From Hyphochytrium catenoides (lineage: Eukaryota; Protista; Hyphochytriomycota), in assembly GCA_900088475.1 (NCBI GenBank), contig FLMG01001571.1, positions 1 to 41,238 of the forward strand: a stretch of 41,238 bases of DNA. Direction: 5' to 3'. Positions within the stretch are counted from its first letter, which is position 1. The number at the start of each line of letters is the position of its first letter. The notes beneath the pieces are model-generated. The model saw nothing but the letters and a program-made list of their open reading frames with translations. It had not been told where the DNA came from and did no database searches. Made by a program: the position numbers and the translations under genes. Below are positions 1,265 through 27,400 of this stretch, one piece after another.

Positions 1265-1759
1265 GCACGCTCTTTCTCTCTGTTGCTCTCTCTCTCTCTC
1301 TCCTTTCTCTTTTTGTCTCTCTCCGCTCGCTCTCTCCGTCTCTCCCTCTCCCCAGAGCTTTCTCAGCGGTGAGCGCTTTGGCTGTGAGTGAGCCCTAACA
1401 GGTGTGTCTCTGATCGTTCTCTCATGTAAATGGTGAGCCGAGCTTCGGCAACTATAAGAAGCGAACCTGATCATCAGACAGCAACCTCACGTCCCAACTG
1501 CATCCGTTTTCCTTCCCATGACTCACCGCCAACGTCCTTTCTCTTTCCTTCTTTCTTCCGTTCTTTCTCTCTCCGTCTCTCTCTCTCTCGGTCTCTCTCT
1601 CGGTCTCTCTCTCTCTCCCTGTCTCTCTCTCTGTCTCTGTGTCTCTGTGTCTCTGTCTCTCTCACTATCCCTCCCTCTCTCTCTCTCTGTCTCTCTCTCT
1701 CTCTGTCTCTCTCTCTCTCTNNNNNNNNNNNNNNNNNNNNNNNNNNNNNNNNNNNNNNN

Positions 1760-1793
<34 letters not shown>

Positions 1794-1960
1794 TTCTTTC
1801 TTTCTCTCTCCCTGCCTCTCAATCTCACTCTCTCTTCGGTTTCTCACTCTTTCTCTCTTTCTTTCTTTCTCTCTCTCTGCCTCTCAATCTCACTCTCTCT
1901 TCGGTTTCTCACTCTTTCTATCTCTTGATCTGTCTCATGCTACGAAGCCCTCTTGTTTCT
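1265..1960. repeat. (CT)n/(GA)n microsatellite and low-complexity tract with N gap at 1721-1759
   Basis: Long ctctct runs directly visible; the overlapping SL/ER-repeat ORFs are artefacts of it. Confidence 0.95.
1812..1919. repeat. Direct duplication with 65-bp period between the divergent GT-like and TRM6 genes
   Basis: ctgcctctcaatctcactctctcttcggtttctcactctttct starts at both 1812 and 1877. Confidence 0.9.
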
Positions 1961-2187
1961 TCTTCCAGACTCCTCTTTGCCCGAACCTGTCGCTCAGAGT
2001 CCTGATGCCAACGTCTGTTCACAGCAACCTCTCCGCCTCTCGTCAAAAAGCGCCATTCCTCCTTAGACCCAGAGGCCAAACTCCATTAGAGAGTCTAAGA
2101 AGGGAGACACTTCTCTCTTGTCTTCCTCCTTTTTCTTTCCAGCCTTAGCAGGCACATTAGGGAGAAGACCAGGCAAGCAGGGGAGAG

Positions 2188-2956
2188 ATGAGTAGAGAGA
2201 CAGACGTTATAAAGGAAGGAGACTTTGTCTGCGTGCATTCCAATGACGACAGGAAGAACATCGTGGAGATTATTGCCAACAAGTATGGTGCCCTGTCATC
2301 GCCTCCCTCTGTCCTTCATCCATTGTCTCCATGTTTCCTCTCTCTCTCTCCTCTCTCTCTCTNNNNNNNNNNNNNNNNNNNNNNNNNNNNNNNNNNNNNN
2401 NNNTCTCTCTCTCTCTCCTCTTTCTCTCTCTCTCTCTTTCTCTTTTGATATATATATACCTCAATCGCTTCACGCTGCTTCTTCTATTCCTCGTCCGTCT
2501 TGGACTCTCGCACTGACATTCTTCTGCCGCTCGTCACTCCTCGTCCCTGGGCATCTCACTTGTCGCTCGCTCTCAAGAACAAGTAGATTTGGAAAGACCT
2601 TCGTCAATCTCCACCAGCTGATCGGCAAGAGGTTCGGGTAAGAGCCTTCTCTGGCTCATGTTTGTCACTCCCTCTCCCCGTCTCTCTCCTTATTCAATGC
2701 ATCTACGTCCTGCGTGATCTGTCTCTCTCTCTGTCTCTCCCGCTGTGTGGCCCGGTCTTGTCTCTGTCGTGACTCAGAGAGCACGCACGTGCCTCTCTCT
2801 TTCTCCTCCTTGCTTAGAATGCTTTGTCCCACTCTCCGCTTTTTTGTCGATATTTCCCTAGACTCTTCCCCTTAGTTGCACCCGAGTCGGATGGTTCTTC
2901 TCTTTAGTTTTTTCTCTGAGTTTAACTCTCTCTCTCTCTCTCTCTCTCTGTGCGTG

Positions 2957-3009
<53 letters not shown>

Positions 3010-7058: not shown

Positions 7059-9826
7059 TCACACATGGCTCCCTTGCTTCTTCCTGAAGTGAAACAGACA
7101 ATATTCTTCCGCCATCTCATTGAAATGCAGCTCGAAGAGTGAGGGAGAGCAATTCACGAGGGGGTTCTCCTTGTAACTCTCAGGCGCTAACATGACTTCG
7201 CAATCAAAGCCTCTCTCTTGCATTTCCTGCTTGAATAGAGATAAACCCTGACGCTCCTGGCTGGCCACATAGAGAACGCTACCGCCTAGTGATGCAAGTA
7301 AGGACATGGACACCAGTAAGCGATCGTGATAACTTTTGATTTCGGTCCAACCTATCTCTCTCCTCTCGGTACTTCCCTTGCCTTAGAAACCACCGCCTTT
7401 GTAAGCGCCTTGCTTGTTTAGGCCAATAGACTTGCTAGGTCTCTGGCTCATGCATTTTTCTTCCATCTGACTCTCTCTTTTTCTGCCAGACTCTCTCTCC
7501 CCACTGTCATTCACTTTGCTTTCTCTTCTTACGTTTCGTCTGCCCTGCGATTCAGTTCCACACATATAGGAGGAAACCGATCCTTACCTTCGCTAAGAGA
7601 GTGCTCTACTACGGCTATTAGGGCTGGAACAAGGCCTTCTGTGTAGATGAGGTCCGACCCAAGGATGATATCGCCAGAATTCTTATCGGGCCAGCTCTCT
7701 TTTTCAAACCAGTTCACTTTTTGCACCTTTAGCATGCGCTTTGGTGGAAGAGACGCAGCACGACACTCCCTTTTGTGGTTGCTCCAGTCTCTCTTTTGAC
7801 AGTCCTTAGAGCAATAGACGACAGCCCTACAGCGGCCACACTTCATCAATTTTCCCTCTGGGTTATCCGGAGTGAAACGTTGAACTGATTTGCAGAGATG
7901 ACAATGAGAGAGAGACATGTTCTCCGACTCCTTGTCTAATGAGTCTTCGTCTTCTGCGAGATTTGGGGAAACAAGTCAGTATTGTGGGTGCTGCTCTTTC
8001 CTCTTCCCTCGTGATGCTGAACTTCATACCTAAGCTACAATCCCTCTACTAATATCAGCCCCAAACGAATATCTGACCGCTCATGTTTTATCCTGCGATG
8101 ACCTCGTTAACCCGATCTTCAGGCTCAGGACAATCTAACCCCCGGTGCGTTAGCGCCAGAACCATTACGCTCTGCTTCTCGTTCCCCTCCTACCTTGCCC
8201 CTACGTGCCTGTCTACTCACTGATGCTCACCTTGATTTAGCTTGGCATTGAACGCCAGGTTTTCTACGGTGTGGTCCATCAAATCCGTCAGGATTACTCC
8301 CAAAGTGTCAGTATACAGATGAGCTGCCAGTCCTGGCACGCCGCATCCTGCACCCAGTTCAAGCACCCTCTTCCCTTTGAACAGTGGGGACAGAGAGACA
8401 ATCCATCTAGCCAAGAGGAGAGAAGCGGACCACACTGTAATACCAGTCGTGTCATCGTTCGCGTCTGCACCAAAGGCTTCTCCTGTCCAATCAAGACCCT
8501 GAAAAGAGCTGTCAGGTGATAATTGGGACACTAGAGAGTGACTGCCGATCGGCAAGAGGATGGGCAAAGGCTGGGCTTACCAGCTCGCGGACTCTCAAAA
8601 TTTTACCGCCCTCCTTCAACCTCATTTCTAACGTGGTTTCTTGGACCACTCGGCTTCCGGATGGGCCTTTAGGTCGTTGTACGGAACTGTCTCCGTCTCC
8701 TTCTCCATCTGCATCCTCGCCATCTTCTCTCACCTACAGTGAGATGGTGACAATGAGCCTGACTATAGAACGCACGTACTTATAAACGCGGTTGGTGCAG
8801 TCACTCACCTTTCCGCCATCCGTCTTCAGCTTTTCTTCGTCCGCAGATTTATGGCTTAGCAGCAATCCAACTGGCACGGCAAGCAAGTGTTGATCGTTAC
8901 TAACTAAAGCTAAAAAGGACGATCTACCACGGAATGTAGGACCTTCTTGTCGAGAGCTGATGGAGATAGTTCCGTAGAAAGTTTCTTGTACCATATAAGC
9001 ACTTACTTATCTCCGCCTCATTGGTGAGGAAGGCTTCCGTCAGAGACCCCTTCCCAAAGCTATTCCGAGCTAGCACGTCAATGTCGGGATAGCCCTCTAA
9101 TAGAGCCTGGACTACCTCCAGGCGCTTGTTCTGAACCGCCCAGTCTAGAAAGAATGAAGATCAGACAGAATTCAAGAAGGGGAGCAAAAAAGGGCGAAGT
9201 AGAGAGGTAAGCGACGTTACAAATGCTGAAGTGGCCGTTGATCAAGCGTCAGGATAACTGTGTACGGGCCACTGTGGACAACAGCGGCTGCGAAAGAAGG
9301 GTGAAAGGATCTTGCCATGACAACCCAGTAAGGAGAGGAACAAGCCACACATTGACTCCCCCGCTTACGTACGCAGTGGAGTATTGCCACTGTCATTGGG
9401 CAGATGAGCTGCCCCTCTCTCTATAAGTAGCCTCACGCAGTCCACATGACCATTGGCGCTCGCTGCAGGAAAGATAGAGTAAGATCCTTGTAAGAGTTGA
9501 TCACAAAGTGAAGAAGATGTTCTTCCACCTCTATGAAGTGCGGTTGACCCCCCAAGGTCTTTGACATTTATGTCAAGCGCTGGGTAGGAGAAGAGCTCTA
9601 ACAGCGCATCACGATCGCCATAGCGCGCAGCCTCAAGGAACTCTCGTTGCAGTTCCTCCAAGGAAGGCTCGGGCTCGCTAGTAGCGGCTTCTGGCGGATT
9701 CTTAGAAGGAGCATTCTGTTGAGGCTTCTTATGGCAGTCTTTGCAGACTGGACGATCTGTCTTCAGTTGTGAAGCTGTGAAGCTCTTCTTGCTCTTCTCC
9801 TGCCTGCAGTCCCTGCAGAGAGTCAT
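7059..9826 (-). CDS. Multidomain protein: Stc1-like CxxC...CxxC finger, Yar1-like ankyrin repeats, and MTF16 seven-beta-strand protein methyltransferase with an inserted zf-MYND; 8 exons
   Basis: Approximate exons 9826-9529, 9462-9373, 9144-9007, 8870-8809, 8733-8581, 8498-8230, 7953-7588, 7285-7059 join in phase via GT-AG. Motifs: CRDC..KSFTASQL..CKDC; STALHRASANGH, GNTPLHWAVQN, RNSFG; DTTGITVWSASLLLARW, VLELGAGCG, ILTD; C..C...CGRC....YCSKDCQKRDW..HKREC; VNW, DIILGSDLIY. Confidence 0.88.
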
Positions 9827-10448
9827 CTTCCTCTGCCTTCTGCCTCTGACTCCACTATCCGTCTCAGGAATCAGCTGACCTCAGTAGGATGTAGTTTCTA
9901 TGCCGGCAGGCGCGATGATCTCTTGAAATAGCAGACGAGTCGATCTGCTGATGACAGCGAAGTGTGCCTTCTTCTGATGTGAAGCTTCCTCTTTTTGATT
10001 CTGAAGTTCTGAAGTTTCAGGGAAGGCGCAACCATTGGCTCAGACCTTCTCCAGGAGCTCTTCAGTAAGAAAACGCCGAAAGCTGCGTACGAAAATAACT
10101 ATCAACCTACTGCTGGGGGATTTCTGAGAGCACTACTACTTATAAAGCGTTGTACAAGAGAGAACGAGAAGCGGCGATACAAGGGAAGGCCAGAGACGGA
10201 GATGCGCTAAATCTTCGTCAGTAGCAAATCTCTATTATTCGGTCTGCGTCGTAGGTCCTGATCGGCAGTCGACAATAGCAGGAAGAGCCCTTGGGACAAT
10301 AAGAAAGAAGAAGGTCATTATAGAGAACAAGGAGGCATCAACAAAAAAATGCAGTTCATTAGTTGGTTTGGCTGATAGCAGAATGTATGGAAGAAGGGTC
10401 TGAGTAGCAGGAGTACCAGGAAGAGTCACACTTCTCTTCTTGCCCATA

Positions 10449-11930
10449 ATGAAAGCCCCGCAGTTGTATCTCTACAGTTTGACTGTAATCACTTCCATTC
10501 TCATCAGCACAGCGGTAGCAGCGGCGATATTCGTCTCCTACAGGGAGAACGGAAGCAAACGGAGCTCTCCGAAGAGAATCCGGAGGAGGACAGCTGGTCG
10601 CATCCTCCTCTTCGGAAACTCGAACTTCATAGGCAGTCATGCTGTGCTGTCTCTGTTAGACGAAGGCTTTGAAGTTCTCTCAGCTGACAACCAAAGCCCG
10701 TGGAATGTCTTCATTGTGAGGAGACAGAAGCAAATTAGTGGAAAGCCGGAGCTTCTCTCTTTCGTGGAGATAGATAGGACAGACATGGAAGGAGTCGAGG
10801 AGATCTTTGCGCTGCAAGACGTAAAATATGACACAGTTATCTATTGCATCGACAATCAAGCTAATGAGGGTGAAGGTATGTTGCTCACTGCTCTACTACA
10901 TACCCTTGGTGTTTGCATGTCACTCTCCCTGCTCTTCACCTCTCCTTCCCTAGTAGAGCCTTCAGTTACTCTCTTGTCTCTCTTCCAAGACCGGCCAGTG
11001 CTAGAGCTAGGTGGCGCTAAGCGGCTGTGTTGGTGTTACCTCGTACTGTTCCAGGGAGCCAGAACAAGACAGAGTGCTATTCTCGGCCTATCCTCTCTCT
11101 CCTCCTGGTTCTCCAATGTATGGAAAGATTTGGTTGCAAGCAATTAGTTCTTTCTTATCAAGCAACACAAGGGTCTCGCCTAGAGGCTACCACCCTCAAC
11201 AGCGGTGCATGCGATCCTATTGCTCTTTCGCTTTCTGTTATAGAGAGCCTACTGAGGGACTATCACCTCCTATTTGGGTGGAAGATTGCGCTTGTCCGCC
11301 ATTGCTCCGTATCAGGTGCCCATCCGAGTGGGCTTCTGGGTTATCTACCTCGTCAACCAGCTCCAAGGGTTGTAGAGAAAGGAGAAACAGACATCCGACA
11401 CGTCAACTTGGGGAATGCGAAAGATGAGGTTGTCCATGTAATGGACGTTGCCGAGACCATTGTTCAAGCAGTGGAAAGGCTAAAAAAAGCGGAAGGACCC
11501 CTACTCGCGCTGTACGAATATGACGTGGGCTCATTTTGCTCAAAGGAAAGTCTGACTTTAGGAGGTAAGGAACGCTCTCCTTCTTCTCCAAGGTGAACTG
11601 CTCTCCAGTCTCATCAGTAGCCCCATCCATTACCTCTTCATCGCTTTGGTGGTAGCATCGCTTGGGTTGTGTCTAGCATTTCTCTTGTCTACACTAGACC
11701 GTTACTGAGCTCATCCCTCAATAGGCCCTCAAAGTGCAAACCCTTATCGAAAGAACAGAGAAAGCCTGTCAGTTCCCTCTTCAAGGGGTCATGCAGAAAC
11801 CTCTATCAAGGTGGAGACTTTGAAAGGTTTGATTCGTCGATCGGCAGACGAAGTAGCTGATGATCTGCACCGCTGGCTGTGTTCTGAGGTCGAAGGAGCG
11901 CATGGTCCACTGACCGACTTGGTCTCGTGA
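10449..11930 (+). CDS. N-terminally membrane-anchored, catalytically degenerate UDP-glucose 4-epimerase (GalE)-like extended SDR; 3 exons (10449-10875, 11055-11565, 11725-11930)
   Basis: ILLFGNSNFIGSHAVLSLLDEGFEVLSADN resembles the GalE N-terminus. MERFGCKQLV, WKIALVRH...GAHPSGLLG, VHVMDVAE and DDLHRW follow the GalE order. Hydrophobic segment LYLYSLTVITSILISTAVAAAIFVSY. Confidence 0.75.
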
Positions 11931-15463: not shown

Positions 15464-18400
15464 ATGGCTGCCCTCCAGCCTCGCCACCGCTGGATGGCAG
15501 CCTGTATCAGCTCCACCTTTGGATCTGAAGTATCGGACAGCCAAGCGGAAGAATTCTTGCAGCACCCTGAAAATCGCAGCATAATTGATAATTTATTGGG
15601 AGGCAAGAACGATGTGCGCAAGGTCTTCGTATGCTATTGCAAGAAGGTAAGAAGAGTTGCCCAAGGACAGCGATCCTTCTGACCTTTATCTAAAAAAGCC
15701 ACCATAGCAAAGGGCGATGAGAGCAGGGAGCAAGGGCTTACCTGTTAAGCTCTCTACTAGCTGTTGTTTCCTAAGTACTATAACCTTTCCATTTTCCATA
15801 GCGATCTCTAACAATAGGCGTACAGGAGGATAACAAGTTTGGGGGCCTGCAGCTAAGTGATGGAACGACCGAGCCAATGAAAGGCAAATGCTGCTACTTT
15901 CTAAGAAACACCAACGATGAAGAACCAGTGGATGTTTCGAAGGTGAGGGTTCGCTTGCGTGATGACCGCCGCGGAGCAAGAAACCACCCACCACCTATCT
16001 GTTCAACTGCTGCCATTTTGTTCCCATCAACTGAGTTTATCCTTTCACTTGTTTGCGCGTCCCACAGCCCACAGACAATCAGGTCCTTTACGGGCAGCTA
16101 TCTGGAGAACCGCTAAAGTCGCTCGAAGTTCTCCTGTCGCACCTCTTCCAGCCTCTTTTCCTGCAGAGAGAGAACTGGGGCTTGGCAGATAAGGCACAGC
16201 AGAATGAATTCAAGGAAGAGACGAGCAAATTTACACATGAAGTGAAGGTAATCCTTTACCCGACAGTGATTATCGCTGCTACCGCGAGGGGAGATGGGCA
16301 GCGATTGTCCAGTCGAGAATCTGCCAAACCGTAGTGCCTCGTTCTTACTCCTTCATTCGAACGTTACTAGGAGGCGATTAAGTCGTTAATGGATGGCCTG
16401 CAGCTAAAAACTCCAGACCCTGCCCTGGTGACCCGCGCAGAGCAGGGTAAGCAGGGAAAGAGTCCTAGCTTTGACCCTGAAATGTGTCAAGCCTTTATGG
16501 AGACACTTGAATGCTGGTGCACCGAAATAGAAGCGTACATTGCCTCACAGGTAAAAAAGGGTGATGCGGAGATTAGTTAATCCCGCCACCATTCCTGTGT
16601 GACTAATCTGACGACATACCTTCATGTCGTGACCTCCATGAATGTAGGATGGATCTGACAACTCTCCTGACGCTGGACCACTTACCGAATTGGAATACTG
16701 GCGGCTGAGGATGCAGCGCCTCATCAGCATCACACAGCAGCTGAAGTCCAAACAATGCAAGGTTGTTCTGAACACCCTCTCTTGGTTTACGAAGCATACA
16801 GCTGACCAAGAGAGAATGAAGGTACGAAGTCACCTCCTTGTTTAGAGCCATGAATAAATGAAGAGTCCATGATAGTGCTGAAAGGAAAGAGTAACAGACT
16901 CATACACTACCTTTTCTTATCTCCTTTCCGTGTGTCCGGTACCCGTGTAGCTTACTTCCCTACTGAAGCGATGGAAGAATGTGGATGTGAGCATCACCGA
17001 GAGCGCGAACGAGGCAAAAGATAATGTCAAGTATCTATTCACGCTAGAAAAGTTCATTGAGCCCCTTTATAATGGAGATCCGAGCTCCATCATTGATAGT
17101 CTTCCGGCACTTATCAACTCTATCAAGATGATCCATACAATCGCAAGGTAACTCTTGAGCCATTTATCATCCAAGTGGTCTAGCCTTATCATGACGTTGC
17201 TTTGGCATGTCTTGTGTCGCAGATACTATAATACTCCGGAGCGGATGACAAAGCTGTTCATCAAGGTCACGAATCAGATGATCAACAATTGCAAGCAGAC
17301 CATTCAGGGGCAGGATGCCGGATCAGACTTATGGGACAAGGATCCAGAAGACCTTGTCAGAAAACTTGAGGCATGTCTCAAGCTTAACGAGGCTTATCAG
17401 GAGCAATACAGGTAGTAGTGGAGGGGTTGCAGTGGTGTCAAGTGAGGACCCTCTCGAAATGCTTAAGTCGTCGTGCGACACACTTTGTTTCTGTTCATGG
17501 TCCTAGGTATACTTTACCTTGAATGGCTTGTTTCAAGTTTCGCCCTTTCCCAACTACACTTTCTGGCTCACTTATTGTGAACTCAAAGGCTCTGTTGGCT
17601 ACCTCATTTCTCTTACACTTGGCAGTATCAAGGAGCACAGCTTCGGCTCACTTTTCCTTCTTCATACTGTTATAACGTGTCAGGCTCAATAGGGACCGTC
17701 TTCAAGCAACCCCAAGCGCTAAGCAGTTTGACTTCAACGAACCGCTCATTTTTGGGAAGTTTGACCTCTTTTGCAGGCGAATCATCAAGCTCATTGACAT
17801 GTTCACCACCATCCACCAGTTCTCGTCACTCGCCCAGCATAAACTTGAAGGTAAGAGGACCAGTCTAGCACACCTGCAATTTCTATTTCGCTGGCGGGTG
17901 CGGGTGCGCGAGGTCTGTTGGCTACCCTCATCACAGAGTTTGGATGGCTATGATCGCTTGTTCTTTGCCACTTTTGCATGCTTCCCCGCGCGCCTAGCTA
18001 ATGACGATTCTTCCTGCTATATACATAGTCTGTTTCTTGTCATGCCTGTCGCTCTAACCATTAGCACCATTTCTCACTGTCGCGGGCTTATCTTTACCGA
18101 AGGCATGGAAGACCTCATTGCCCATTTCAAGCGCATAATTTCTGAGTTCCGTGGCAAGCGTCACGATCTCCTGAACTATCATAATAACAAGTTTGACCGG
18201 GACTACGTCGAGTTTAATGTCCGCATCTCGGACCTGGAAGGCATGCTGCAACAGTTTATCAACCAGTCCTTCGAGAGTATTACCAGCATTGAACACTCGC
18301 TGAACCTCCTTCGGAAGTTCCAAACTATTCTTCACAGAGAGAACTTGAAGTCAGACTTGGATTCAAAGTTCAACGTGATATTCCAGAACTACGGACAAGA

Positions 18401-21400
18401 ACTTGAGCAGGTCCAGCTCTTGTATGAGAAGCTGAAGCACAGTCCGCCTATCCCAAGAAACCTGCCTCCGGTGGCGGGAAATATTACTTGGTCACGTCAT
18501 CTGTTGAAGAGGATCGAGGAGCCCATGAAAAAGTTCGAGAGTAATCAGAACGTACTCGCAAGCAAGGACGCAAAGAGGATCATCCGTATGTACAACAAAG
18601 TAGCGAGAACTCTGGTGGCCTTCGAATACCTCTGGTATCAAGCTTGGCTCAACTCTCTTGAGACAGCGAAAGCTGGGCTGCAAGCTACACTCATCATTCG
18701 ACATCCTGAAGATGGAAAACTCTATGTAAACTTCGATCAAGAAATCTTACAGCTGATTAGGGAGGCTAAGTGCCTCGATCGCATGGGTATCGAGATCCCT
18801 GAAAGTGCCAGGATCATTTTGATGCAAGAGGAGAAGTTCAAAACTCACTTTAATGAACTGCAGTACTCTCTTTCCGAGTACGAGAGGCTGGTGAAGAAGG
18901 TGATTCCCGTCACCGCGATGCTCCTTCGTCCACACTTTGCAGACATGGACTTCAAGCTCCGTCCCGGAATGGTGACGCTCACATGGACTAGCATGAACAT
19001 TGAGGCCTACAAGCAGCATCTACGTACTGGTCTCCAGAAGCTAGAGGAACTTGTCACCAACATAAACGACGTAGTAGAGAATCGACTAGAGAAGAACTTG
19101 AAGATAGTCTCCAAGTCCTACCTAGTCAACATGCCACAGGATCAGTCTCTCTCTCTGGAACAGTTTCTAGACCTGCAGAATCAGCACATACAGGGCTTAG
19201 GACTCACGCTGCAGGGGAAGAACCAGGAAATTGAGACAGCCGTAGAAGACGTACTGAAAATCGTTGTGGATTATCCGCTAGATCCCCACGTGGAGGGAGT
19301 AAGTGCGGAGGAAGTGCAGAAGTTGAAGAAGCACTACAACCACTTCATGTACCAGGCCCTCCTGCACTGCACCAAGAAGAGCCTGAACCAGATCAAGAAC
19401 AGAGTGGGTACCAGGAGTGGCATTGCAGGTCTACTTCTAATGGACAAGCCGATATTTGATGTGGAGCTGCAGCTTAGTGGAGCTGACATGAAGGTACTGT
19501 TAGAATAGCTGCTTCAAATTAGAGGAACAGAAACGAGAATCGTTGAGCTTCTTCTCTCTTAGGCGGATGACCAAATGTGGCTGTAAGACTCTGTCTGCCG
19601 CTCGATAGATGTGCTTTTCTTTTATTTTTTTGCCGTCATACTCTTGTTCCTCATGCATCTACACTCACGACGTAATCCTCGTGTTACCTACTACATCTCG
19701 CCTAAAGCTTTGCACATCTAAGTTTAATTATCCGCCTCTCTGTCTCTTCTCGTCCTTTCCCAAAGCTTCATCCTGCGTTGGAGGACATTCAGCAGGTCAT
19801 CAACCAAGCGGCAAAGATTGTCTTACAATGTAGCAAGAGCATTTACGACTGGGGCCAAGATAGTCTCCCAGACTCCTCCAAGAGGACGTTCTTTGACCGC
19901 ATCACGAAGGATATAGAAGTGGTCCGCGTGGTGCTCCTGCTAACCGGCAACATACAAGGACTGAAGAATAACATTGCGGAGTACACGAACACCTTCAAGA
20001 GCTACGATTGGCTTTGGAAGGACGACAAGCAGGCAGCGTACGAAGAGTTTCTGAAGACGGTGCGTTGAGTGAATCTGCCGTTCTCGCTAACTTGCCATGT
20101 GCCTTCAATCAGTACCTCTCCTTCTTCAGTCTAAGCGTTAACATTTTTCACAGGAACCGGAGCTGGATGATTTCGAAAGAGAGCTCCAGAAATTTGTGGA
20201 ACTCGAGGAAGAGATTCTCACACTCCCATCTCTTCAAAAGATTGGGCCGATCTCGCTTAACTCCTCCAGTGTTAGGGCACAATTATTGGAGCTCGCCCAG
20301 CAGTGGAAGTATCAGTATAGCAACAATTTACACCTTAGAGCCAAAGAGAGGATGAATGAACTCACTGAGTACATTCGGACGGCAGAGGTCAGTCACGAAC
20401 ATTCTCTCTTTCTTTTTCATCGCTAGAGGGCGTTTGCTTACACAATCATCTTCCTTTCATCCACCGTCCCCACTCATACTTTCACCATCTGACTGCTTTT
20501 CGAATTTATGCAGAAAAACCTGAGCCGAGATGTGAATGACCTCGTGTCTCTCCGCTTCATGATGCTTCTTCTACGAGAGATTAGACAAAAAGACAGCGGC
20601 ATCTACCTTGTCATCAACCCAATCCTACGTACATATAGTATCCTCGAGTTCTACCTCCCACAGGTCAGCCCACTATATGTTGATGACAAGGTTTTAGCGT
20701 CCAACTACGTTCATTAATTAACCGTGGTGCTAATATTCACCGACGTTATCCTAGGGCTTCATGGGAAAGGAAGAGATGGATCAAAAGAGTGTTCTTTCTT
20801 CTTCATGGAGAAAGCTGGTGCAGCACGCTGAAGCGCGAACCGAGGAACTGAGCCGGACCCAAGCTGGTTTCAAAAGGAAACTTCTTAGAGATATCAAAGA
20901 GTTTGTCGGGGATGTCAAGATGTTTAGAGCAGAGTTTTTGGCCAACGGGCCCATGGTAAAAGGTGCGCAGAAGAACTCAGATGGCGGTGGTTTCCCATCT
21001 CTGTTGGTGCCCAGCGCCAATCAATTCAACTTCGTAGCTCCTATGCGTCACTCACTACTTACTGTCCCACCTATTATCCTCAACGCCTACCGTAGGCATA
21101 CCTCCCCTTGAGGCTGTTGAGAGGCTAACTCGCTTCAAGGACGAGTTTTCCATTCGGGAAAGGAAGTTTGACCTCTATCGAACCGGTGAAGACCTCTTCG
21201 CCCTCCCTAATACCGAATATCAGGAGCTTGTACAAACCAAGAAGGAGCTTGAACTACTAGAAAAGCTCTTTGGTCTCTACACTGATGTTCTGCACACCAT
21301 TGAGGAGTGGAAAACAATTCCCTGGGTGGAGGTTGTGAGCAACATTGAGAACATGACTCAGAAGGTAGTCTTTCCTGCCCCGCCCTGTTGGATGCAAGCT

Positions 21401-24400
21401 GCGGCGTCTTACCAGTGCTATTTCCTAACGTTACTCGTGGGACTGTTCTTCCAATAGGTCGAAGAATTCTCTCAGCGGTGTCGAAAGATGCCTAATAAAC
21501 TGCGGGAATGGGAAGCGTACACGGACCTCAAGAAGATGCTCGACGACTTTTCCGTAGTTCTCCCCCTGCTTCAGGAGCTTAGTAAAGACTCAATACGCCC
21601 CAGACACTGGGAGGAAATAGAGAAGATCACTGGCAGCAAGTTGGACGTCTCTTCCCCTGATTTCAAGCTTCTCTCTCTTCTGGAAGCAAAGATTGTGAAC
21701 TTCAAAGAAGACATTGACGAAGTCACTGACAGCGCAGACAAACAGCTCAAGATAGAGATGAATCTGAAAGAAGTAGAGAAAATATGGGAGGAGAAGGAGT
21801 TTGCCTTCCTTGAATGGAAGGAGAGGAATGTCAGCGTTCTTAAAGGCTGCGCAGGAGTTCTAGAGGAACTGGAGGAAGCACAGATGAACGTACAAACGCT
21901 TCTTACCATGCGTCACATTGCTCCATTCAGGGAAGAGGCAGAGCAGCTGAAGCTGAAACTTCTAAACACTTTCGAAGCGCTCGACAAGTGGCTTAAAGTG
22001 CAGGTTCGGAGTCTGTGCTGTTTGCTCTGTCTCCTTAGGGGTTGATCTGGGTCTGTAGTGGCTGTCGGGCGCTGTAATCCTTCAGGCTTTTAACTTCACC
22101 TACTACTCATCCTTCTCGTTTTCTGCGTCAAATAACAACTCCTAAGCATCAATGGTCTATCAAATGTAGGTTTTCTGGTGCTCCCTTGAGTCAGTCTTCT
22201 CAGGCGGTGATATTGCTAAGCAGCTTCCAACTGAGGCCAAAAAATTCCAGAAGATCGACAAAGAATGGGGAAAGATTATGGGCATGGCAGTGCAGGAGAA
22301 GCAGGTCCTTGCTTGCTGCTCGCACGAGCTACTGGTCTCTGACACCATGCAGGACATGTATGAGGAACTACAGAGGTGCCAAAAGAGCCTGGAAGGCTAT
22401 CTTGAGCAGAAGAGGAATAAGTTTCCTCGTTTTTACTTTGTCTCCAACCCTTCTCTTCTACTAATTCTGTCTCAAGGATCAGGTACGCGCATACGGCTGA
22501 ATCTGGTAGGCGAAGTGGCGAAGACTAACATTCATGGGGGCGCATACTCCCTTCTTTCTTCCTTGTCCATGCCTTCTACCTACGCTGCACAGAGCCGCTC
22601 TCCATGAATGAGCATTATGAGAAAGTGTTCGACGCAATTGAGCAAGTCCAGCATGACAAGAAGGACAAGACGATTATCCTTTCTATGTTGGCGGGAATAG
22701 AGGTTGTCCCTTTCTCCAAGCCTGTCAAGGCTATAGGGAATATTGAAGATTGGCTCTCTGATCTAGCCCGGGGGATGCAAATGACCATGAAAGATATTTG
22801 CAGAAACTGCGCTGCAGATATTGCGACAGCAAGCAATGACATCAAGTCATTAAGAGGGTTTGTTGACAATTATGTGGCGCAGTTCGCACTGTTGGGTATC
22901 CAGATGATGTGGACAGCAGATGTGACAACGGCACTTGAAACCTGCAAGGTTAAAAAGAACGCAATGAAGGAGGCAAACCAGAAGTCCTTGCAGGTAACAT
23001 TGTGGATCCTCTGTTTCGAACTGTGTGCGTTACTAGTACTCTAATTGAGGGGTCCTCGTCAAACAAAGCGATAGCCGATTTTCCAGTCTCAGCACCACGT
23101 TTGCCTTGGTGGTATGGGAGTCTCCGTTCCGTCTCACTGAATACCGCGTTTCGGTCTATCTGTATACCGCCTTTCGGTTCTCGTTCAAACCTGTGACCAA
23201 GACCTCTCTCCTTCTGCTGTCAACAATCACCATAGGTTCTGTATGAGCTGTCGTCGTGGTGCCTTCAGGACCTCGGGCCGAAGCCAAACCGAACCAAGAT
23301 CGAGACATTAGTCACAATTCATGTGCATCAGAGGGACGTGCTGAACGATCTTACCGCTCTCCATAAGCAAAAGAAAATAAGCGATGCTAATGACTTTGAA
23401 TGGCTAAAGCAAGCACGCTTCTATTGGAAGGCTAACCAAGCTGATGAGCTGGGTGATGATGGTAAGTGACTTTATGCGCGGTGCCTCAAGCTGGTGCGTG
23501 TATTTATCCTTTGTGCCTCAAGCTCTTGCCCCTGCTTATTCTTTGCTTTATTGGAGGACTTCCTAGTCCGTAATGAGAAGCATCACGATGTGAAGCTCCT
23601 CAACAGTACCTTCTTTGTGCTGTCCATCGAAATTCTTTTGAATGTGTCACGAGCATGGCATGTCCTTCCTTGTTACTTGCGTTTGTCGGTCAGTCCTTTT
23701 ATTGTCCTTATCTGACCTGTGCGTCCTCGCGGTATAGCTTGTGTCATCTCAATTACGGACGTGGACTTTACCTACCAATTCGAGTACCTCGGCGCAAAGG
23801 AGCGACTAGTCATTACACCTCTTACTGATCGCTGCTATATTACTTTGGCCCAAGCTTTGGGCATGTACTTTGGTGGAGCTCCAGCTGGACCTGCAGGAAC
23901 TGGAAAAACCGAGACTGTGAAGGATCTGGGGAGGTAAGCCGGCCTTTTTAGGTAGAGTGCCAAAGACGTGAAAGGTGCAATAGCAAGATCTGCCTTTCCG
24001 CTTGTATTGCATAGCGGGGGAGGTTCACGGCTATCAGGTGGGGAGGCTAATATGTGCTCTTCCTCCTGCGCTCAAGAACACTTGGGATCTTTGTCGTCGT
24101 CACAAATTGTACGGACCAACAGAAGTATACAGACTGTGCCAAAATCTTCAAAGGCCTTTGTCAGGGTGGACTTTGGGGCTGTTTCGATGAGTTCAATAGA
24201 ATCCAGCTTCCCGTCCTTTCTGTGGTGGCACAACAGGTAGGTGTCTTACGAAGATCAATAGCCCTTTCTTATTGGCCCTTTTGACAAGCGACCTCTTGTT
24301 GGTTTCCACTTCTGCTGTGTCAAACGCAGGTTCTGGCCATCCAAAACGCTAAGAAGAGCGGCACAGAGTACTTCCAGTTCCCAGGAGATCCGCAGAACAT

Positions 24401-27400
24401 TCTGCTTAAGCCGGTGAGGTCTTGCGGGCTTAGATATATTCGACGCAAAGTTGTATGCCTAACCTTTTTTAACGGAATCCTGTCAACGCGTAGGTTTGTG
24501 GTTTCTTCATCACCATGAACCCGGGCTACGCGGGTCGGCAGGAACTCCCTGAGAACTTGAAGGCACTTTTTAGAGGTGTTGCGATGATGGTCCCGGATTT
24601 TGAGATCATTATGAAGGTTAGCCTTACGTGTGGATATCATGGGTCAATTCGAGAGGACGAGAGCAAGGGAGGTTGTGGTTCTAAGATCTACCCTGCAGGT
24701 GAAGCTTTGTTCCGTGGGCTACCAAGAATACGCTCTCCTGGCAAAGAAGTTCTTTATCCTGTACAACACGTGCAAGGAGCAGCTCTCCGCACAAAAGCAC
24801 TATGACTGGGGTCTGCGAAATATCTTGGCTGTCCTCCGAACAGCAGGTTAGTGCCGCTGCAATCGATGACGCTTACACAGAGAGAGCGAGAAGGGAATAG
24901 GAAGGTCAACATGGCCTGGGGGTGCAGACAAGCGTTGAGCAGCATCTGGTAGCGCAGTTGTCATTCGACAAACCATTCATATGTTTATCTCCTTACTCCC
25001 TCTAAAGGCAAAACTAAGCGCGACAACATCAACGAGCCAGAGGCAAAGCTGCTATTGCAGACTCTCAGAGATATGAACCTATCCAAGCTGGTCGCCCAGG
25101 ACGTGCCTTTGTTTCTCTCCCTCCTGTCAGATCTCTTCCCCTCAATCCCTTCACCAGCCAAGGGTCAGTACCCGGCGTTGGAAACGGCTTTGAACAAGGT
25201 ATTGTGGATTATTCTATTCCTCTGCTTGTAGCCTCCATTCCTTTTAGTAAAGCTGCCGCTTACCTCGCGCAGTGGCGTTAGTGGCTCTTGACTAACTGCT
25301 ATTTACGTTAACCCAATTGGTCCATGTATTTGCAATGCTCTGTGCCCGTATTCTTCTGCACCCTAACTGACTAAGCTCTTTCCTGGTCGTCACGTCACAC
25401 CCCGGATAGTAACCCTTTTGTCTATCATTACTTTTGCCGTTTAGACCATCGAGAGTCTGGGTCTCGTACATCATCCAGGTTGGCTCAACAAGGTGATCCA
25501 GTTTTACGAGACCACTCTTGTCAGGCATGGTATTATGCTTGTCGGACCGTCAGGAGGAGGAAAGACGAGGATCTTCGAGTGCTTGCAGCAGGCCCTCTCC
25601 GTCACTACCGAAATCACGCACAAACAGGCCCGCCTGAATCCTAAGGTGGGCTCACTCTGTACCCTATCTTCGCAAGGGCATTGTCCTTCATCTAGCTAAA
25701 CTTCTACTAAACCTTTCATGAACGATTTCTTCATAGTCCTTGTAGACGGCATTGGTGAATAGTCGACGAGATAAACCAGCTCACCACTTTGTTCACTTCT
25801 CCTTGCCAACTCTTCTTGCGATAGGCTATTCGTGCTCAGGAGATGTATGGAGAGGTGGATCCTCTATCGGGAGAGTGGACAACTGGTGTCTTTGCAGCCA
25901 TGTGGGCGAAATATAACAATAAGACGAACAAGTTCAACACGTGGATCATCTGTGATGGTCCTGTTGATGCCATATGGATTGAGGATCTTAACACGGTCCT
26001 CGATGATAATAAGATTCTAACGCTAGCTAACGGTGATCGGATACCTATGACGGATAATGTGAAGCTGATGTTTGAGGTGGAAACTCTTGTCAACGCTTCA
26101 CCCGCCACAGTGTCAAGAGCTGGTACGTTATAGAAGGCGATCCTGTTGCTTGCATCTCAGGCTCCATCTCCACTTCACACGCCTTGCATCTTCGGTTTAC
26201 GGGTTAAGCGTCTCAGTCCATAGTCATCAGTGGCGTTACCTAGCTTCTGCTGGTGAGGACTCTGCTTACTCCGTCTCATCACACCTTTGTCTTCATTTCC
26301 ATTAACAAAGGTATTGTCTTCGTCTCCGACACGGACCTGGACTGGGCACCAGTTGTCGAAGCTTGGATTCGCTCTCGAGTCCCAGCTCAGCAACCTATTT
26401 TGCGCGCTCTCTTCACTAAGTACTTAGGTGAAAATGGTACAGGTCACTTGATGGACTTCCTTAATCGGAACACCTCCCAGGTAAAAACTAGACACTCCTT
26501 GTCTCCTGAAGTTCCTAGAGACGTATCGTAGTACTCTCAATGTGGCCTAATGTTATCAGCTATGATGTTAGCTCTAAGTGGCGGACTTCCATTATTAACA
26601 ACCACTGAACACCACACGACAGGTGATGACCGTCACCAGGGTGAGCCAAGCTTCTCGCTTGTACTACCTGATCCAGGGGCTAACGGAAGGAGAAGGTGAG
26701 ATGACTCAGCACCCCGAATCTACCCTTCTTGTCATTCGTTGACAGATTCGCGATTTATAGGAGCTGCCACACTCAGTGATAATCCTGAAAAGCTAGCCAT
26801 TGAGCTTGAGAAGATCTTTCTTTACTCTCTCAGTTGGTCTCTAGGCGGCTTATTGGAACCAGAGGACAGAGTGAAATTCCACGAATACATAGCGAAATAT
26901 GACGACAAAAGTAGGGTTGCCAGTCATCTGAACTGCTCCTTTATTCTACTTTGTGCTGCTGCGATTTCCATAGCGTCTTGCCACTCATGCCATCTCCAGA
27001 TGCCATCTTCTTAGTGCGTGCAGGCGAAACAAATTTCCTTGGTCTACCTTCTCGAAGCTCGTTTTCCTTCGTACGGATAATAGCGACCTTGTCTCCTGCC
27101 TACTCCCTAATATTCCGCCATCCTGAAAGGAATTGACATCATCATTTATCACCACTTTGTCCCCTCTCTGACCCGCCGAATCTCTCTATCTCGTAACACG
27201 CAGACCTTATGCCTCGGGTGCAGGAGGGGGAGACAATCTACGAGTACTTTATTGAGCCCCAGAGCCTACAATGGAAGAAGTGGGTGCCGCCAGAATGGAA
27301 GTATCCGACACATTCAGGAGGAGCAGGAGGAAAGTTGGATTTCTCCAATCTTCTCGTTCCTACCATGGATAGCACCCGTGCTCTCTTCCTCATGCATCAT

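What the first reader, a model, noticed from the sequence alone, without database searches (positions are those of the whole stretch)
7059..9826. Yar1-like ribosomal-protein chaperone fused to a seven-beta-strand methyltransferase: candidate 'escort-and-methylate' system
Seen: the ankyrin block reads ARYGD...L..LF...STALHRASANGH..VR.L.E...N.SGNTPLHWA.QN..L.VV..L...Y.D....RNSFG...TEA, followed by an acidic linker. Knowledge: this follows, motif by motif, yeast Yar1 as I recall it (ARAGD, STALHMAAANGH, NKTGNTALHWASLN, RNKFG..AIFEA, acidic tail), the dedicated chaperone of ribosomal protein uS3. Seen: it is spliced in frame to an apparently intact MTF16-type methyltransferase (TG..VW, VLELGAGCG, TD, W, DLIY). 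Knowledge: that family mostly methylates translation factors, ribosomal proteins and chaperones. Inference: one polypeptide may capture nascent uS3 or a similar client and methylate it during 40S assembly. I know of no functional characterisation of such a fusion.
Basis: partly seen in the sequence, partly recalled or inferred. Interest (0 to 1): 0.8.

Follow-up and report, generated by a model that had tools for sequence, protein, structure and literature searches.

The report
Ankyrin-tethered lysine methyltransferase with MYND insert
A real eight-exon protist gene joins a Yar1-like four-repeat ankyrin module to an apparently intact family-16 protein-lysine methyltransferase that carries a MYND zinc finger inside it; the fusion is conserved across oomycetes and related protists, but its proposed role in escorting and methylating ribosomal protein uS3 remains an untested idea.

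Summary
Window 9826-7059 (minus strand) holds an eight-exon, all GT-AG gene that encodes 533 aa. From the N-terminus it has a CxxC-x20-CxxC motif, four ankyrin repeats, an acidic linker, and a Methyltransf_16 domain interrupted by a zf-MYND.

The fusion is not a modelling artefact. It is colinear with about 50 oomycete orthologues at 44-47% identity. One of these is a single uninterrupted ORF. Transcriptome-derived ANK-MT16 proteins without MYND exist in other protists.

Every family-invariant methyltransferase residue is present, as are the hallmark [D/E]xx[Y/F] motif and both tryptophans.

The Yar1 reading is only partly supported. A profile built from fungal Yar1 orthologues alone matches the window's ankyrin block end to end at 96 bits. 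Generic natural ankyrin arrays reach 32-67 bits. No stand-alone Yar1-like protein from oomycetes appeared. However, most of the shared motifs are ankyrin-consensus positions, fold searches rank Yar1 only 13th, and the tree is ambiguous.

uS3 binding and methylation could not be tested. The architecture is already visible in public annotation, but I found no paper that characterises it.

The parts
7059..9826 (-). Whole gene: 8 exons, 533-aa product (Zn motif, 4 ankyrin repeats, acidic linker, MT16 domain with MYND insert)
   Evidence: Exon model with GT-AG at all 7 introns and an open 1602-nt CDS. It aligns colinearly over the full length with oomycete orthologues.
9529..9826 (-). Exon 1: start codon, N-terminal extension, ankyrin N-cap and first half of repeat 2
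   Evidence: Weak Ank_4 hit in Pfam. PDB hits to ankyrin N-cap and repeat.
9734..9817 (-). CxxC-x20-CxxC putative zinc motif (residues 4-31), found only in the window's protein among the 76 family members examined
   Evidence: Sequence. Weak Pfam Stc1 hit, E 0.14. Absent from all the other members.
8827..9658 (-). Four-repeat ankyrin block (residues 57-190) spread over exons 1-4
   Evidence: A single end-to-end domain against three profiles: the fusion-family profile A1 (172 bits), the Yar1-like profile A3 (168 bits) and the fungal Yar1 profile A4 (95.7 bits). The orthologue model has pLDDT 95.5 and nine helices, as expected for capped ankyrin repeats.
9373..9462 (-). Exon 2 (repeat 2, start of repeat 3)
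   Evidence: Pfam Ank, 22.7 bits. Splice model.
9007..9144 (-). Exon 3 (repeat 3 with LHWA, C-cap repeat RNSFG..TEAF)
8809..8870 (-). Exon 4 (end of C-cap, LLLSHKSA, start of linker)
   Evidence: The conserved LLEHxSA motif spans the exon 3/4 junction.
8647..8826 (-). Acidic linker (residues 191-225, e.g. EDGEDADGEGDGD)
   Evidence: Sequence. It aligns with the acidic linkers of orthologues and the acidic tails of stand-alone relatives.
8581..8733 (-). Exon 5: linker and the first strands of the methyltransferase N-terminal extension, ending in ..VREL
   Evidence: The invariant RELxxxW motif spans the exon 5/6 junction, which ties the two halves together.
8231..8498 (-). Exon 6: MT16 core. Holds the active-site Trp (TGITVW, 8447-8430), motif I VLELGAGCG (8366-8340) and post-I ILTDL (8294-8280)
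   Evidence: Pfam PF10294, 45.7 bits, profile positions 15-92. PDB matches EEF2KMT, METTL21B and CaM-KMT. Coordinates.
7763..7903 (-). zf-MYND (residues 354-400) with all eight ligands of the C4-C2HC pattern, inserted between MT16 profile positions 92 and 97
   Evidence: Pfam PF01753, 49.7 bits. Ligand positions. In the orthologue model the insert and a long helix lie between the helix after strand 2 and strand 3.
7588..7953 (-). Exon 7: MYND, then the second conserved Trp (KVNW, 7720-7709) and the [D/E]xx[Y/F] motif GSDLIY (7660-7643)
   Evidence: A 187-nt contig of one RNA-like run lies on 7626-7812.
7059..7285 (-). Exon 8: C-terminal part of the methyltransferase domain and the stop codon
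   Evidence: Aligns with orthologue C-termini (NPL..LHFNEM..Y.F).

Best explanation
The gene encodes one polypeptide that works as a family-16 (seven-beta-strand) protein-lysine methyltransferase with built-in docking modules.

Shown:
- The catalytic domain has every sequence feature needed to bind S-adenosylmethionine and methylate lysine.
- It is permanently tethered through an acidic linker to a capped four-repeat ankyrin domain.
- A MYND zinc finger is inserted in a surface loop of the Rossmann fold.
- The whole arrangement is conserved in oomycetes. The ANK-MT16 core, without MYND, is conserved in other stramenopiles and in further protists whose taxa were not established.

Inferred:
- The concave face of the ankyrin domain holds a protein client near the active site.
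- The MYND finger binds a second, proline-motif partner.
- The ankyrin module belongs to the same family of small ankyrin proteins with acidic tails as fungal Yar1 (about even odds).
- uS3 is therefore the best single named candidate client (about 0.3). That would make the enzyme a chaperone-coupled methyltransferase acting on free uS3.
- If the client is not uS3, the same docking logic applies to another protein.
For: Gene and fusion:
- Eight GT-AG exons with an open 533-aa frame.
- Full-length colinearity with about 50 oomycete orthologues at 44-47% identity.
- Conserved motifs span the exon 3/4 and 5/6 junctions.
- Orthologue P0021 is one uninterrupted ORF, L001:43-1524.
- Complete transcriptome ORFs (MMETSP, EukProt) carry ANK plus MT16.

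Catalytic competence:
- PF10294 scores above its cut-off.
- All 17 invariant columns and 14 of 16 near-invariant columns of a 27-member family alignment are kept.
- Motif I, post-I Asp, Trp270, Trp418 and D437-L-I-Y440 are present. These are the family-16 hallmarks described in PMC5324768.
- The orthologue model (pLDDT 84.5) is closest in fold to CaM-KMT, EEF2KMT, Efm7 and METTL21D.

Docking modules:
- The ankyrin model has pLDDT 95.5.
- MYND scores 49.7 bits and has eight ligands.
- N-terminal regions of family-16 enzymes are variable and needed for activity.

Yar1 link:
- The fungal-only Yar1 profile finds yeast Yar1 at 155 bits.
- It gives the window's block a single end-to-end domain of 95.7 bits.
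- Stand-alone protist relatives score 112-125 bits and generic ankyrin arrays 32-67 bits.
- Stand-alone relatives have acidic tails.
- No stand-alone Yar1-like oomycete protein appears in the top 120 of either profile search.
Against: - No biochemical or interaction data exist.
- Ankyrin similarity is dominated by consensus positions. Designed consensus ankyrins outrank Yar1 in every PDB search.
- Yeast Yar1 is only rank 13 of the reviewed proteins by fold.
- In the tree, fungal Yar1 sits next to the generic ankyrin windows. It is not inside the fusion clade.
- The apparent absence of an oomycete stand-alone Yar1 rests on capped, prefiltered top-120 lists.
- The methyltransferase domain belongs to no characterised subfamily (18% identity or less), so it gives no clue to the substrate.
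- Splicing in this organism is not confirmed by reads.
Confidence: 0.6

Rival explanations
1. The full first-reader model. The ankyrin block is the lineage's Yar1 orthologue. It captures nascent uS3 by the N-terminal helix, and the tethered enzyme methylates uS3 before 40S assembly.
For: - End-to-end match to the fungal Yar1 profile, well above generic ankyrin arrays.
- Four repeats followed by an acidic stretch, as described for Yar1.
- Orthologues were named after Yar1 by two annotation projects.
- No stand-alone oomycete Yar1-like protein was seen.
- Yar1 has a patchy phylogenetic profile in orthologue surveys.
- There is a precedent for a chaperone and a methyltransferase jointly protecting a ribosomal protein: Bcp1 and Rkm1 on uL14, PMC11248248.
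Against: - The similarity is largely ankyrin consensus.
- Fold search and tree are not specific.
- No lysine methylation of uS3 is known to me (own knowledge, not searched).
- Nothing links this methyltransferase clade to ribosomal proteins.
Confidence: 0.3
2. The ankyrin block is a generic, near-consensus ankyrin domain unrelated to Yar1 in function. It docks some other client, such as a translation factor or chaperone, as in most characterised family-16 enzymes.
For: - DARPins and designed consensus repeats are the best PDB matches.
- Many unrelated ankyrin proteins give equal Foldseek E-values.
- Even true Yar1 orthologues score higher in total against designed ankyrins than against Yar1, so sequence scores discriminate poorly.
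- The nearest folds of the methyltransferase domain methylate calmodulin, eEF2, eEF1A and VCP.
Against: - Single-domain, end-to-end scores against Yar1-only profiles are about 30-60 bits above natural generic ankyrin arrays.
- The repeat number, the caps and the acidic extension are shared.
Confidence: 0.35
3. The ankyrin domain reads the enzyme's own product (methyl-lysine), as the ankyrin repeats of G9a/GLP do, so that the enzyme spreads or stays on methylated targets.
For: ANK plus lysine methyltransferase is the G9a/GLP architecture (own knowledge; the G9a review PMC8541646 is listed).
Against: The block resembles capped four-repeat chaperone-type proteins, not the G9a array. No evidence from any tool.
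Confidence: 0.04
4. The fusion in this window is a gene-model artefact: two adjacent genes (ankyrin, methyltransferase) make separate transcripts.
For: Splice junctions are not confirmed by reads. The one RNA-like run covers only 7626-7812.
Against: - Intron 4, between the two halves, is 75 nt, with GT-AG ends and the frame kept.
- Invariant motifs span the flanking junctions.
- The orthologue is a single ORF.
- The same order is conserved in dozens of species.
Confidence: 0.02

Closest known systems
Yar1 (S. cerevisiae YPL239W; PDB 4BSZ chain B), dedicated chaperone of ribosomal protein uS3
   Same: - Four capped ankyrin repeats followed by an acidic stretch.
- A fungal Yar1 profile matches the block end to end.
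- The NDSGNTPLHW stretch is identical to those of several fungal Yar1-like proteins.
   Different: - Yar1 is a stand-alone protein of about 200 aa. Here the block is fused to an enzyme.
- Fungal Yar1 has an insertion between repeats 2 and 3 that is absent here.
- The LLEHxSA end of the block is shared with protist relatives, not with fungi.
- uS3 binding is untested.
Family-16 (Methyltransf_16) protein-lysine methyltransferases: CaM-KMT, EEF2KMT/FAM86A, Efm7, METTL21A-D
   Same: The Pfam family, motif I, the post-I Asp, the two tryptophans, the [D/E]xx[Y/F] motif and the fold.
   Different: - At most 18% identity to any characterised member.
- The N-terminal substrate region is an ankyrin domain.
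- A MYND finger plus a long helix is inserted between the helix after strand 2 and strand 3.
SMYD lysine methyltransferases (MYND inserted in a SET domain)
   Same: A MYND finger splits a lysine-methyltransferase catalytic domain. The MYND matches SMYD1-3 MYNDs in sequence.
   Different: The catalytic fold is seven-beta-strand, not SET, so this is an analogy and not membership.
G9a/GLP (ankyrin repeats plus SET domain)
   Same: Ankyrin repeats and a lysine methyltransferase in one chain.
   Different: SET fold. A longer ankyrin array that reads methyl-lysine. No sequence relationship was shown.
Uncharacterised database entries of the same family, such as the Phytophthora infestans PITG_01108 product, the Saprolegnia parasitica SPRG_05371 product, and 'methyltransfer with n-terminal ankyrin repeats' of Nannochloropsis oceanica
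   Same: Orthologous architecture. Oomycete members include the MYND insert.
   Different: The window's protein is only 44-47% identical to them. It alone has the N-terminal CxxC..CxxC extension, and its gene has seven introns.

Membership tests
Yar1 (uS3 chaperone) | Core of four ankyrin repeats | tested here: met
   Yar1 has four repeats (PMC4740875). The orthologue model shows nine helices, which fits capped four-repeat ankyrin, at pLDDT 95.5. The window's block aligns over its whole length.
Yar1 (uS3 chaperone) | Acidic extension after the ankyrin core | tested here: met
   Residues 191-225 are rich in Asp and Glu. Stand-alone relatives end in acidic tails.
Yar1 (uS3 chaperone) | End-to-end match to a profile of bona fide Yar1 orthologues, above unrelated ankyrin proteins | tested here: met
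   Profile A4 (20 fungal proteins) finds 4bsz_B at 155 bits. The window's block scores 95.7 bits as one domain, profile positions 11-173 of 188. Generic natural arrays score 32-67 bits. Caveat: designed consensus ankyrins also score highly in total.
Yar1 (uS3 chaperone) | Yar1 is the specific best match among solved or reviewed proteins | tested here: not met
   Yeast Yar1 is rank 13 in the AFDB Swiss-Prot search. DARPins fill the top 50 of the PDB fold search. True Yar1 orthologues fail this test as well, so it discriminates poorly.
Yar1 (uS3 chaperone) | Groups with Yar1 orthologues in a phylogeny, apart from generic ankyrins | tested here: inconclusive
   FastTree of 176 trimmed domains. 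Fungal Yar1 form a clade (support 0.91) next to the generic windows. The fusions are nested among stand-alone protist relatives. The reading depends on the root.
Yar1 (uS3 chaperone) | Stand-alone protein of about 200 aa | tested here: not met
   Here the block is the N-terminal part of a 533-aa enzyme.
Yar1 (uS3 chaperone) | Binds the N-terminal helix of uS3 on its concave face | not testable with these tools
   No complex prediction or binding assay is available.
Methyltransf_16 / Family-16 lysine methyltransferases | Pfam PF10294 above the gathering score | tested here: met
   45.7 bits (exon 6) and 22.7 bits (exon 7) against a cut-off of 21. Orthologues score 54-81 bits.
Methyltransf_16 / Family-16 lysine methyltransferases | AdoMet-binding motif I (ExGxGxG) and an acidic post-I residue | tested here: met
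   VLELGAGCG at 292-300 and ILTDL at 316-320. Both are invariant in the family alignment.
Methyltransf_16 / Family-16 lysine methyltransferases | [D/E]xx[Y/F] motif and two conserved tryptophans | tested here: met
   D437-L-I-Y440, W270 and W418. The features are defined in PMC5324768.
Methyltransf_16 / Family-16 lysine methyltransferases | Seven-beta-strand fold closest to known family-16 enzymes | tested here: met
   Tested on the orthologue model, not on the window protein itself. Top matches are CaM-KMT, EEF2KMT, Efm7 and METTL21D at E 1e-14 to 1e-11.
Methyltransf_16 / Family-16 lysine methyltransferases | Lysine methyltransferase activity | not testable with these tools
   Needs an enzyme assay.
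zf-MYND | Pfam PF01753 above its cut-off, with the C4-C2HC ligand set | tested here: met
   49.7 bits against 22.7. Seven Cys and one His are at the expected spacing in residues 354-400.
SMYD | SET catalytic domain split by MYND | tested here: not met
   No SET domain in any Pfam scan. The catalytic fold is Rossmann-type. The resemblance is analogy only.

The most novel reading that the evidence does not exclude
In oomycetes and their kin, the only Yar1-type uS3 chaperone is the ankyrin domain of this enzyme. Free uS3 would then be lysine-methylated while it is being escorted. As a Rosetta-stone fusion, this would also predict a functional link between stand-alone Yar1 and a family-16 methyltransferase in other eukaryotes.
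Probability: 0.25. Interest if true: 0.75.

Novelty: new variant of a known kind. Interest (0 to 1): 0.5.

Why it matters
Family-16 methyltransferases recognise their substrates through variable N-terminal regions that are poorly understood. Here that region is a discrete, well-folded ankyrin domain. It comes from the same family as a dedicated ribosomal-protein chaperone, and there is a second docking finger inside the catalytic fold.

If the ankyrin domain does bind uS3, this would be the first case of a ribosomal-protein chaperone covalently joined to a modifying enzyme. It would point to an unknown uS3 modification. It would also suggest which stand-alone methyltransferase to test with Yar1 in other organisms.

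If it binds something else, the protein is still a convenient model for how seven-beta-strand lysine methyltransferases acquire specificity. It would also be a non-SET counterpart of the SMYD and G9a designs. Because the family is conserved in all the oomycete plant and animal pathogens sampled, it can be studied experimentally in Phytophthora or Saprolegnia.

Tried and rejected
- Ranking Yar1 in sequence searches of the PDB, using exon 1, the fusion-family profile and the fungal Yar1 profile. Long ankyrin arrays and designed consensus proteins dominate by summed score. They do so even for true Yar1 orthologues. I therefore dropped this ranking as a test.
- Foldseek of the ankyrin model against PDB and Swiss-Prot. 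All capped ankyrin domains score alike, so the result is not discriminating.
- ESM Atlas look-alikes of the ankyrin part. It returned only generic ankyrin clusters, the nearest being about 185 aa from green algae.
- RNA evidence. One run was found, and one 187-nt contig lies inside exon 7. There is no junction information.
- The representative-library search with exon 7. It was swamped by multi-MYND proteins. Only four or five single-stretch hits were orthologues. They were enough to seed everything else.
- Supplementary tables of the ribosome-biogenesis orthologue survey. The stramenopile row for YAR1 is not in the stored text.
- Counting the N..GN..LHW signature in 'generic' versus family repeats. 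The background set was itself selected by these profiles, so I make no claim from it.
- Residue numbers printed are shifted, because the alignment step dropped insertions. The identities are right.
- The window's own spliced protein could not be given to the database or structure tools by reference. Orthologue P0021 and its family alignments stood in for it.
Full report
**What is in the sequence.** The minus strand between 9826 and 7059 carries a eukaryotic gene. Reading the strand and joining eight exons gives an open 1602-nt reading frame of 533 codons. The exons are 9826-9529, 9462-9373, 9144-9007, 8870-8809, 8733-8581, 8498-8231, 7953-7588 and 7285-7059. Every intron starts with GT and ends with AG, and the introns are 66-302 nt long. 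The ATG at 9826 is the first start codon after an upstream in-frame stop.

**Domains.** Pfam scans of the individual exons find ankyrin repeats in exons 1-3. Methyltransf_16 is found in exon 6 (45.7 bits, profile positions 15-92) and in exon 7 (22.7 bits, positions 97-146). A zf-MYND (49.7 bits) lies exactly between those two pieces. The product therefore runs as follows:
- a CxxC-x20-CxxC motif, residues 4-31
- a four-repeat ankyrin block, residues 57-190
- an acidic linker, residues 191-225
- a family-16 methyltransferase domain, residues 226-533, with a MYND finger at residues 354-400 inside it

I confirm it.

**Is the fusion real?** A search of the representative library with exon 7 was dominated by multi-MYND proteins. 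It nevertheless gave a few single-stretch hits that cover both the MYND and the C-terminal methyltransferase motifs. One of them, P0021 (493 aa), has the full architecture of ANK, Methyltransf_16 and zf-MYND.

Using P0021 as the query returned about 50 orthologues from Phytophthora, Peronospora, Hyaloperonospora, Plasmopara, Pythium, Globisporangium, Lagenidium, Saprolegnia, Aphanomyces and Albugo. It also returned ANK-MT16 proteins without MYND from Nannochloropsis and from MMETSP and EukProt transcriptomes.

The window's protein aligns with these over its whole length. It is 44-47% identical to Peronosporales and Saprolegniales alike. This suggests an organism outside or at the base of the sampled oomycetes.

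Three observations exclude a modelling artefact:
- The conserved LLEHxSA and RELxxxW motifs span the exon 3/4 and exon 5/6 junctions.
- The intron between the two halves is only 75 nt.
- The gene for P0021 is one uninterrupted 1482-nt ORF on its contig.

Direct read support in this organism is lacking. The only RNA-like run holds a single 187-nt contig inside exon 7.

**The methyltransferase half.** I aligned the methyltransferase regions of 27 family members and added the window's sequence. All 17 invariant columns and 14 of the 16 nearly invariant columns are kept. The residue numbers printed by that call are shifted; the correct ones are.

The hallmarks of family-16 enzymes are all present:
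- an active-site tryptophan: W270 in TGITVW
- a second tryptophan: W418 in KVNW
- the [D/E]xx[Y/F] motif: D437-L-I-Y440
- motif I: VLELGAGCG
- the post-I aspartate

An AlphaFold model of the orthologue's methyltransferase region (pLDDT 84.5) is closest in fold to CaM-KMT, EEF2KMT/FAM86A, Efm7, Efm3 and METTL21D. Identity is never above 18%, and sequence searches of the PDB agree. The domain is therefore an intact but distinct clade of family 16, and its relatives give no hint of the substrate.

In the model, the MYND finger and a long helix are inserted between the helix that follows strand 2 and strand 3. Among the 76 family members examined, 50 carry MYND at this place. The spacing between motif I and the DxxY motif is about 155 residues in members with the insert and about 79 in those without.

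Evidence against a specific match:
- Exon 1 and a profile of the fusion family's ankyrin blocks find DARPins and other designed consensus ankyrins first in the PDB.
- Foldseek with a very confident model (pLDDT 95.5) also puts DARPins on top.
- Foldseek places yeast Yar1 13th among reviewed proteins. Its E-value is indistinguishable from those of GABP-beta, tankyrase, ANKRD7 and others. Yar1 does have among the longest coverage and the highest TM-scores.
- Much of the 'motif by motif' match (ARxGD, TALHxAxxxGH, GNTPLH, FGxx..xA) is the N-cap, repeat and C-cap consensus of ankyrin domains in general.

These rankings also fail for true Yar1 orthologues. A Myxozyma protein and a Didymella protein each match 4BSZ chain B as their only clean single-stretch hit. 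Both still score higher in total against designed ankyrins. The rankings therefore say little either way.

A fairer test uses best single-domain scores. I built a profile from 20 stand-alone fungal proteins only. It finds yeast Yar1, which was not in the training set, at 155 bits in one stretch covering the whole chain. Against sequences held locally the same profile gives:

| Sequence | Best single-domain score (bits) |
|---|---|
| Corallochytrium protein | 147 |
| Plant protein | 130 |
| Group of about 38 stand-alone protist proteins (mostly 180-235 aa, most with acidic tails) | 112-125 |
| ANK-MT16 fusions | 96-123 |
| Window's block, as one domain over profile positions 11-173 of 188 | 95.7 |
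| Generic natural ankyrin arrays, including the best other oomycete ankyrin proteins found | 32-67 |

A broader Yar1-like profile gives the same bimodal picture. The window's block scores 168 bits and generic arrays 49-84 bits. The stand-alone protist group shares the CARYGE N-cap, LHWA, N.FG..TEA and L.H.SA with the fusions, and ends in acidic tails as Yar1 does.

Other points:
- Neither profile search of the 5.8-billion-protein collection listed a stand-alone Yar1-like oomycete protein. Fungal, holozoan, plant and alveolate ones were listed. These lists are capped at 120 and prefiltered, so this is weak evidence of absence.
- Two oomycete annotation projects named the orthologue after Yar1.
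- A FastTree of 176 trimmed domains is ambiguous. Fungal Yar1 form a clade next to the generic windows, while the fusions are nested among the stand-alone protist relatives. If the generic windows are taken as the root, the fusions sit inside a Yar1-like ingroup. Support is modest.
- An orthologue survey had already noted a patchy profile for YAR1.

I put membership of the Yar1 family at roughly even odds.

**How it most likely works.**

Shown:
- an intact family-16 lysine methyltransferase domain
- a permanently tethered capped ankyrin domain
- an inserted MYND finger
- conservation of the arrangement

Established knowledge:
- Ankyrin domains bind proteins on their concave face. Yar1 does so with the N-terminal helix of uS3.
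- MYND fingers bind proline-rich motifs (own knowledge).
- The N-terminal regions of family-16 enzymes are variable and needed for activity.

Inferred:
- The ankyrin domain docks the client next to the active site.
- The MYND finger adds a second partner.
- If the ankyrin block keeps Yar1's specificity, the client is free uS3.

A chaperone and a methyltransferase jointly protecting a ribosomal protein has a precedent in Bcp1 and Rkm1 on uL14. None of the binding or catalytic steps could be tested here.

**Novelty.** The architecture is visible in public annotation. Examples are 'MYND-type domain-containing protein', 'putative Zinc finger, MYND-type, lysine methyltransferase, ankyrin repeat-containing', and 'methyltransfer with n-terminal ankyrin repeats'. 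Full-text searches for the locus tags and for combinations of ankyrin, MYND and family-16 terms found no characterisation.

I class it as a new variant of a known kind: a family-16 methyltransferase whose substrate-recognition region is a Yar1-like ankyrin domain, with a SMYD-like MYND insertion on a non-SET fold. The window's copy adds a unique N-terminal CxxC..CxxC motif.

**Practical notes.** The spliced protein could not be passed by reference to the database or structure tools, so orthologue P0021 and family alignments were used in its place.

Noticed in passing
window 9734-9817 (-): The N-terminal CxxC-x20-CxxC motif (MTLCRDC...CKDC) has a weak Pfam hit to the Stc1 domain (E 0.14). It was absent from all 75 other family members checked, so it may be a lineage-specific zinc module added to the fusion.
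   Followed up: partly
window about 17799-35192 (+): A large multi-exon dynein heavy chain gene. ORF pieces hit DHC_N1 (E 2e-105), DHC_N2, AAA_7, the microtubule-binding stalk and Dynein_heavy D6.
   Followed up: partly
window 10440-11596 (+): Two overlapping ORFs in different frames both hit the NAD-dependent epimerase/dehydratase family (N- and C-terminal parts). This is probably one spliced gene, divergently oriented from the methyltransferase gene.
   Followed up: no
window 1270-3005: A run of CT/TC-rich microsatellite and low-complexity arrays (periods 2-65). It gives strong strand skew: GC skew -0.37 and AT skew -0.47 in 1001-2000.
   Followed up: partly
window 38181-38744 (-): An ORF with a lactate/malate dehydrogenase C-terminal domain. 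An earlier first-stage note on this window discusses an MDH1-like enzyme here.
   Followed up: no
P0176, P0181-P0193, P0025 (metagenome and Logan proteins of 338-388 aa): Many MYND-bearing family members in the collection start at an internal Met just before LLEHxSA and lack the ankyrin block. They are probably ORF calls truncated by introns or contig ends, not a separate ankyrin-less form.
   Followed up: partly
P0223 (Edaphochlamys, 429 aa), P0233 (Gonium, 389 aa): Green-algal proteins with a Yar1-like ankyrin block (122-142 bits for P0223 against the Yar1-type profiles) and a long C-terminal region with no Pfam domain. This may be another fusion partner of the same ankyrin family.
   Followed up: no
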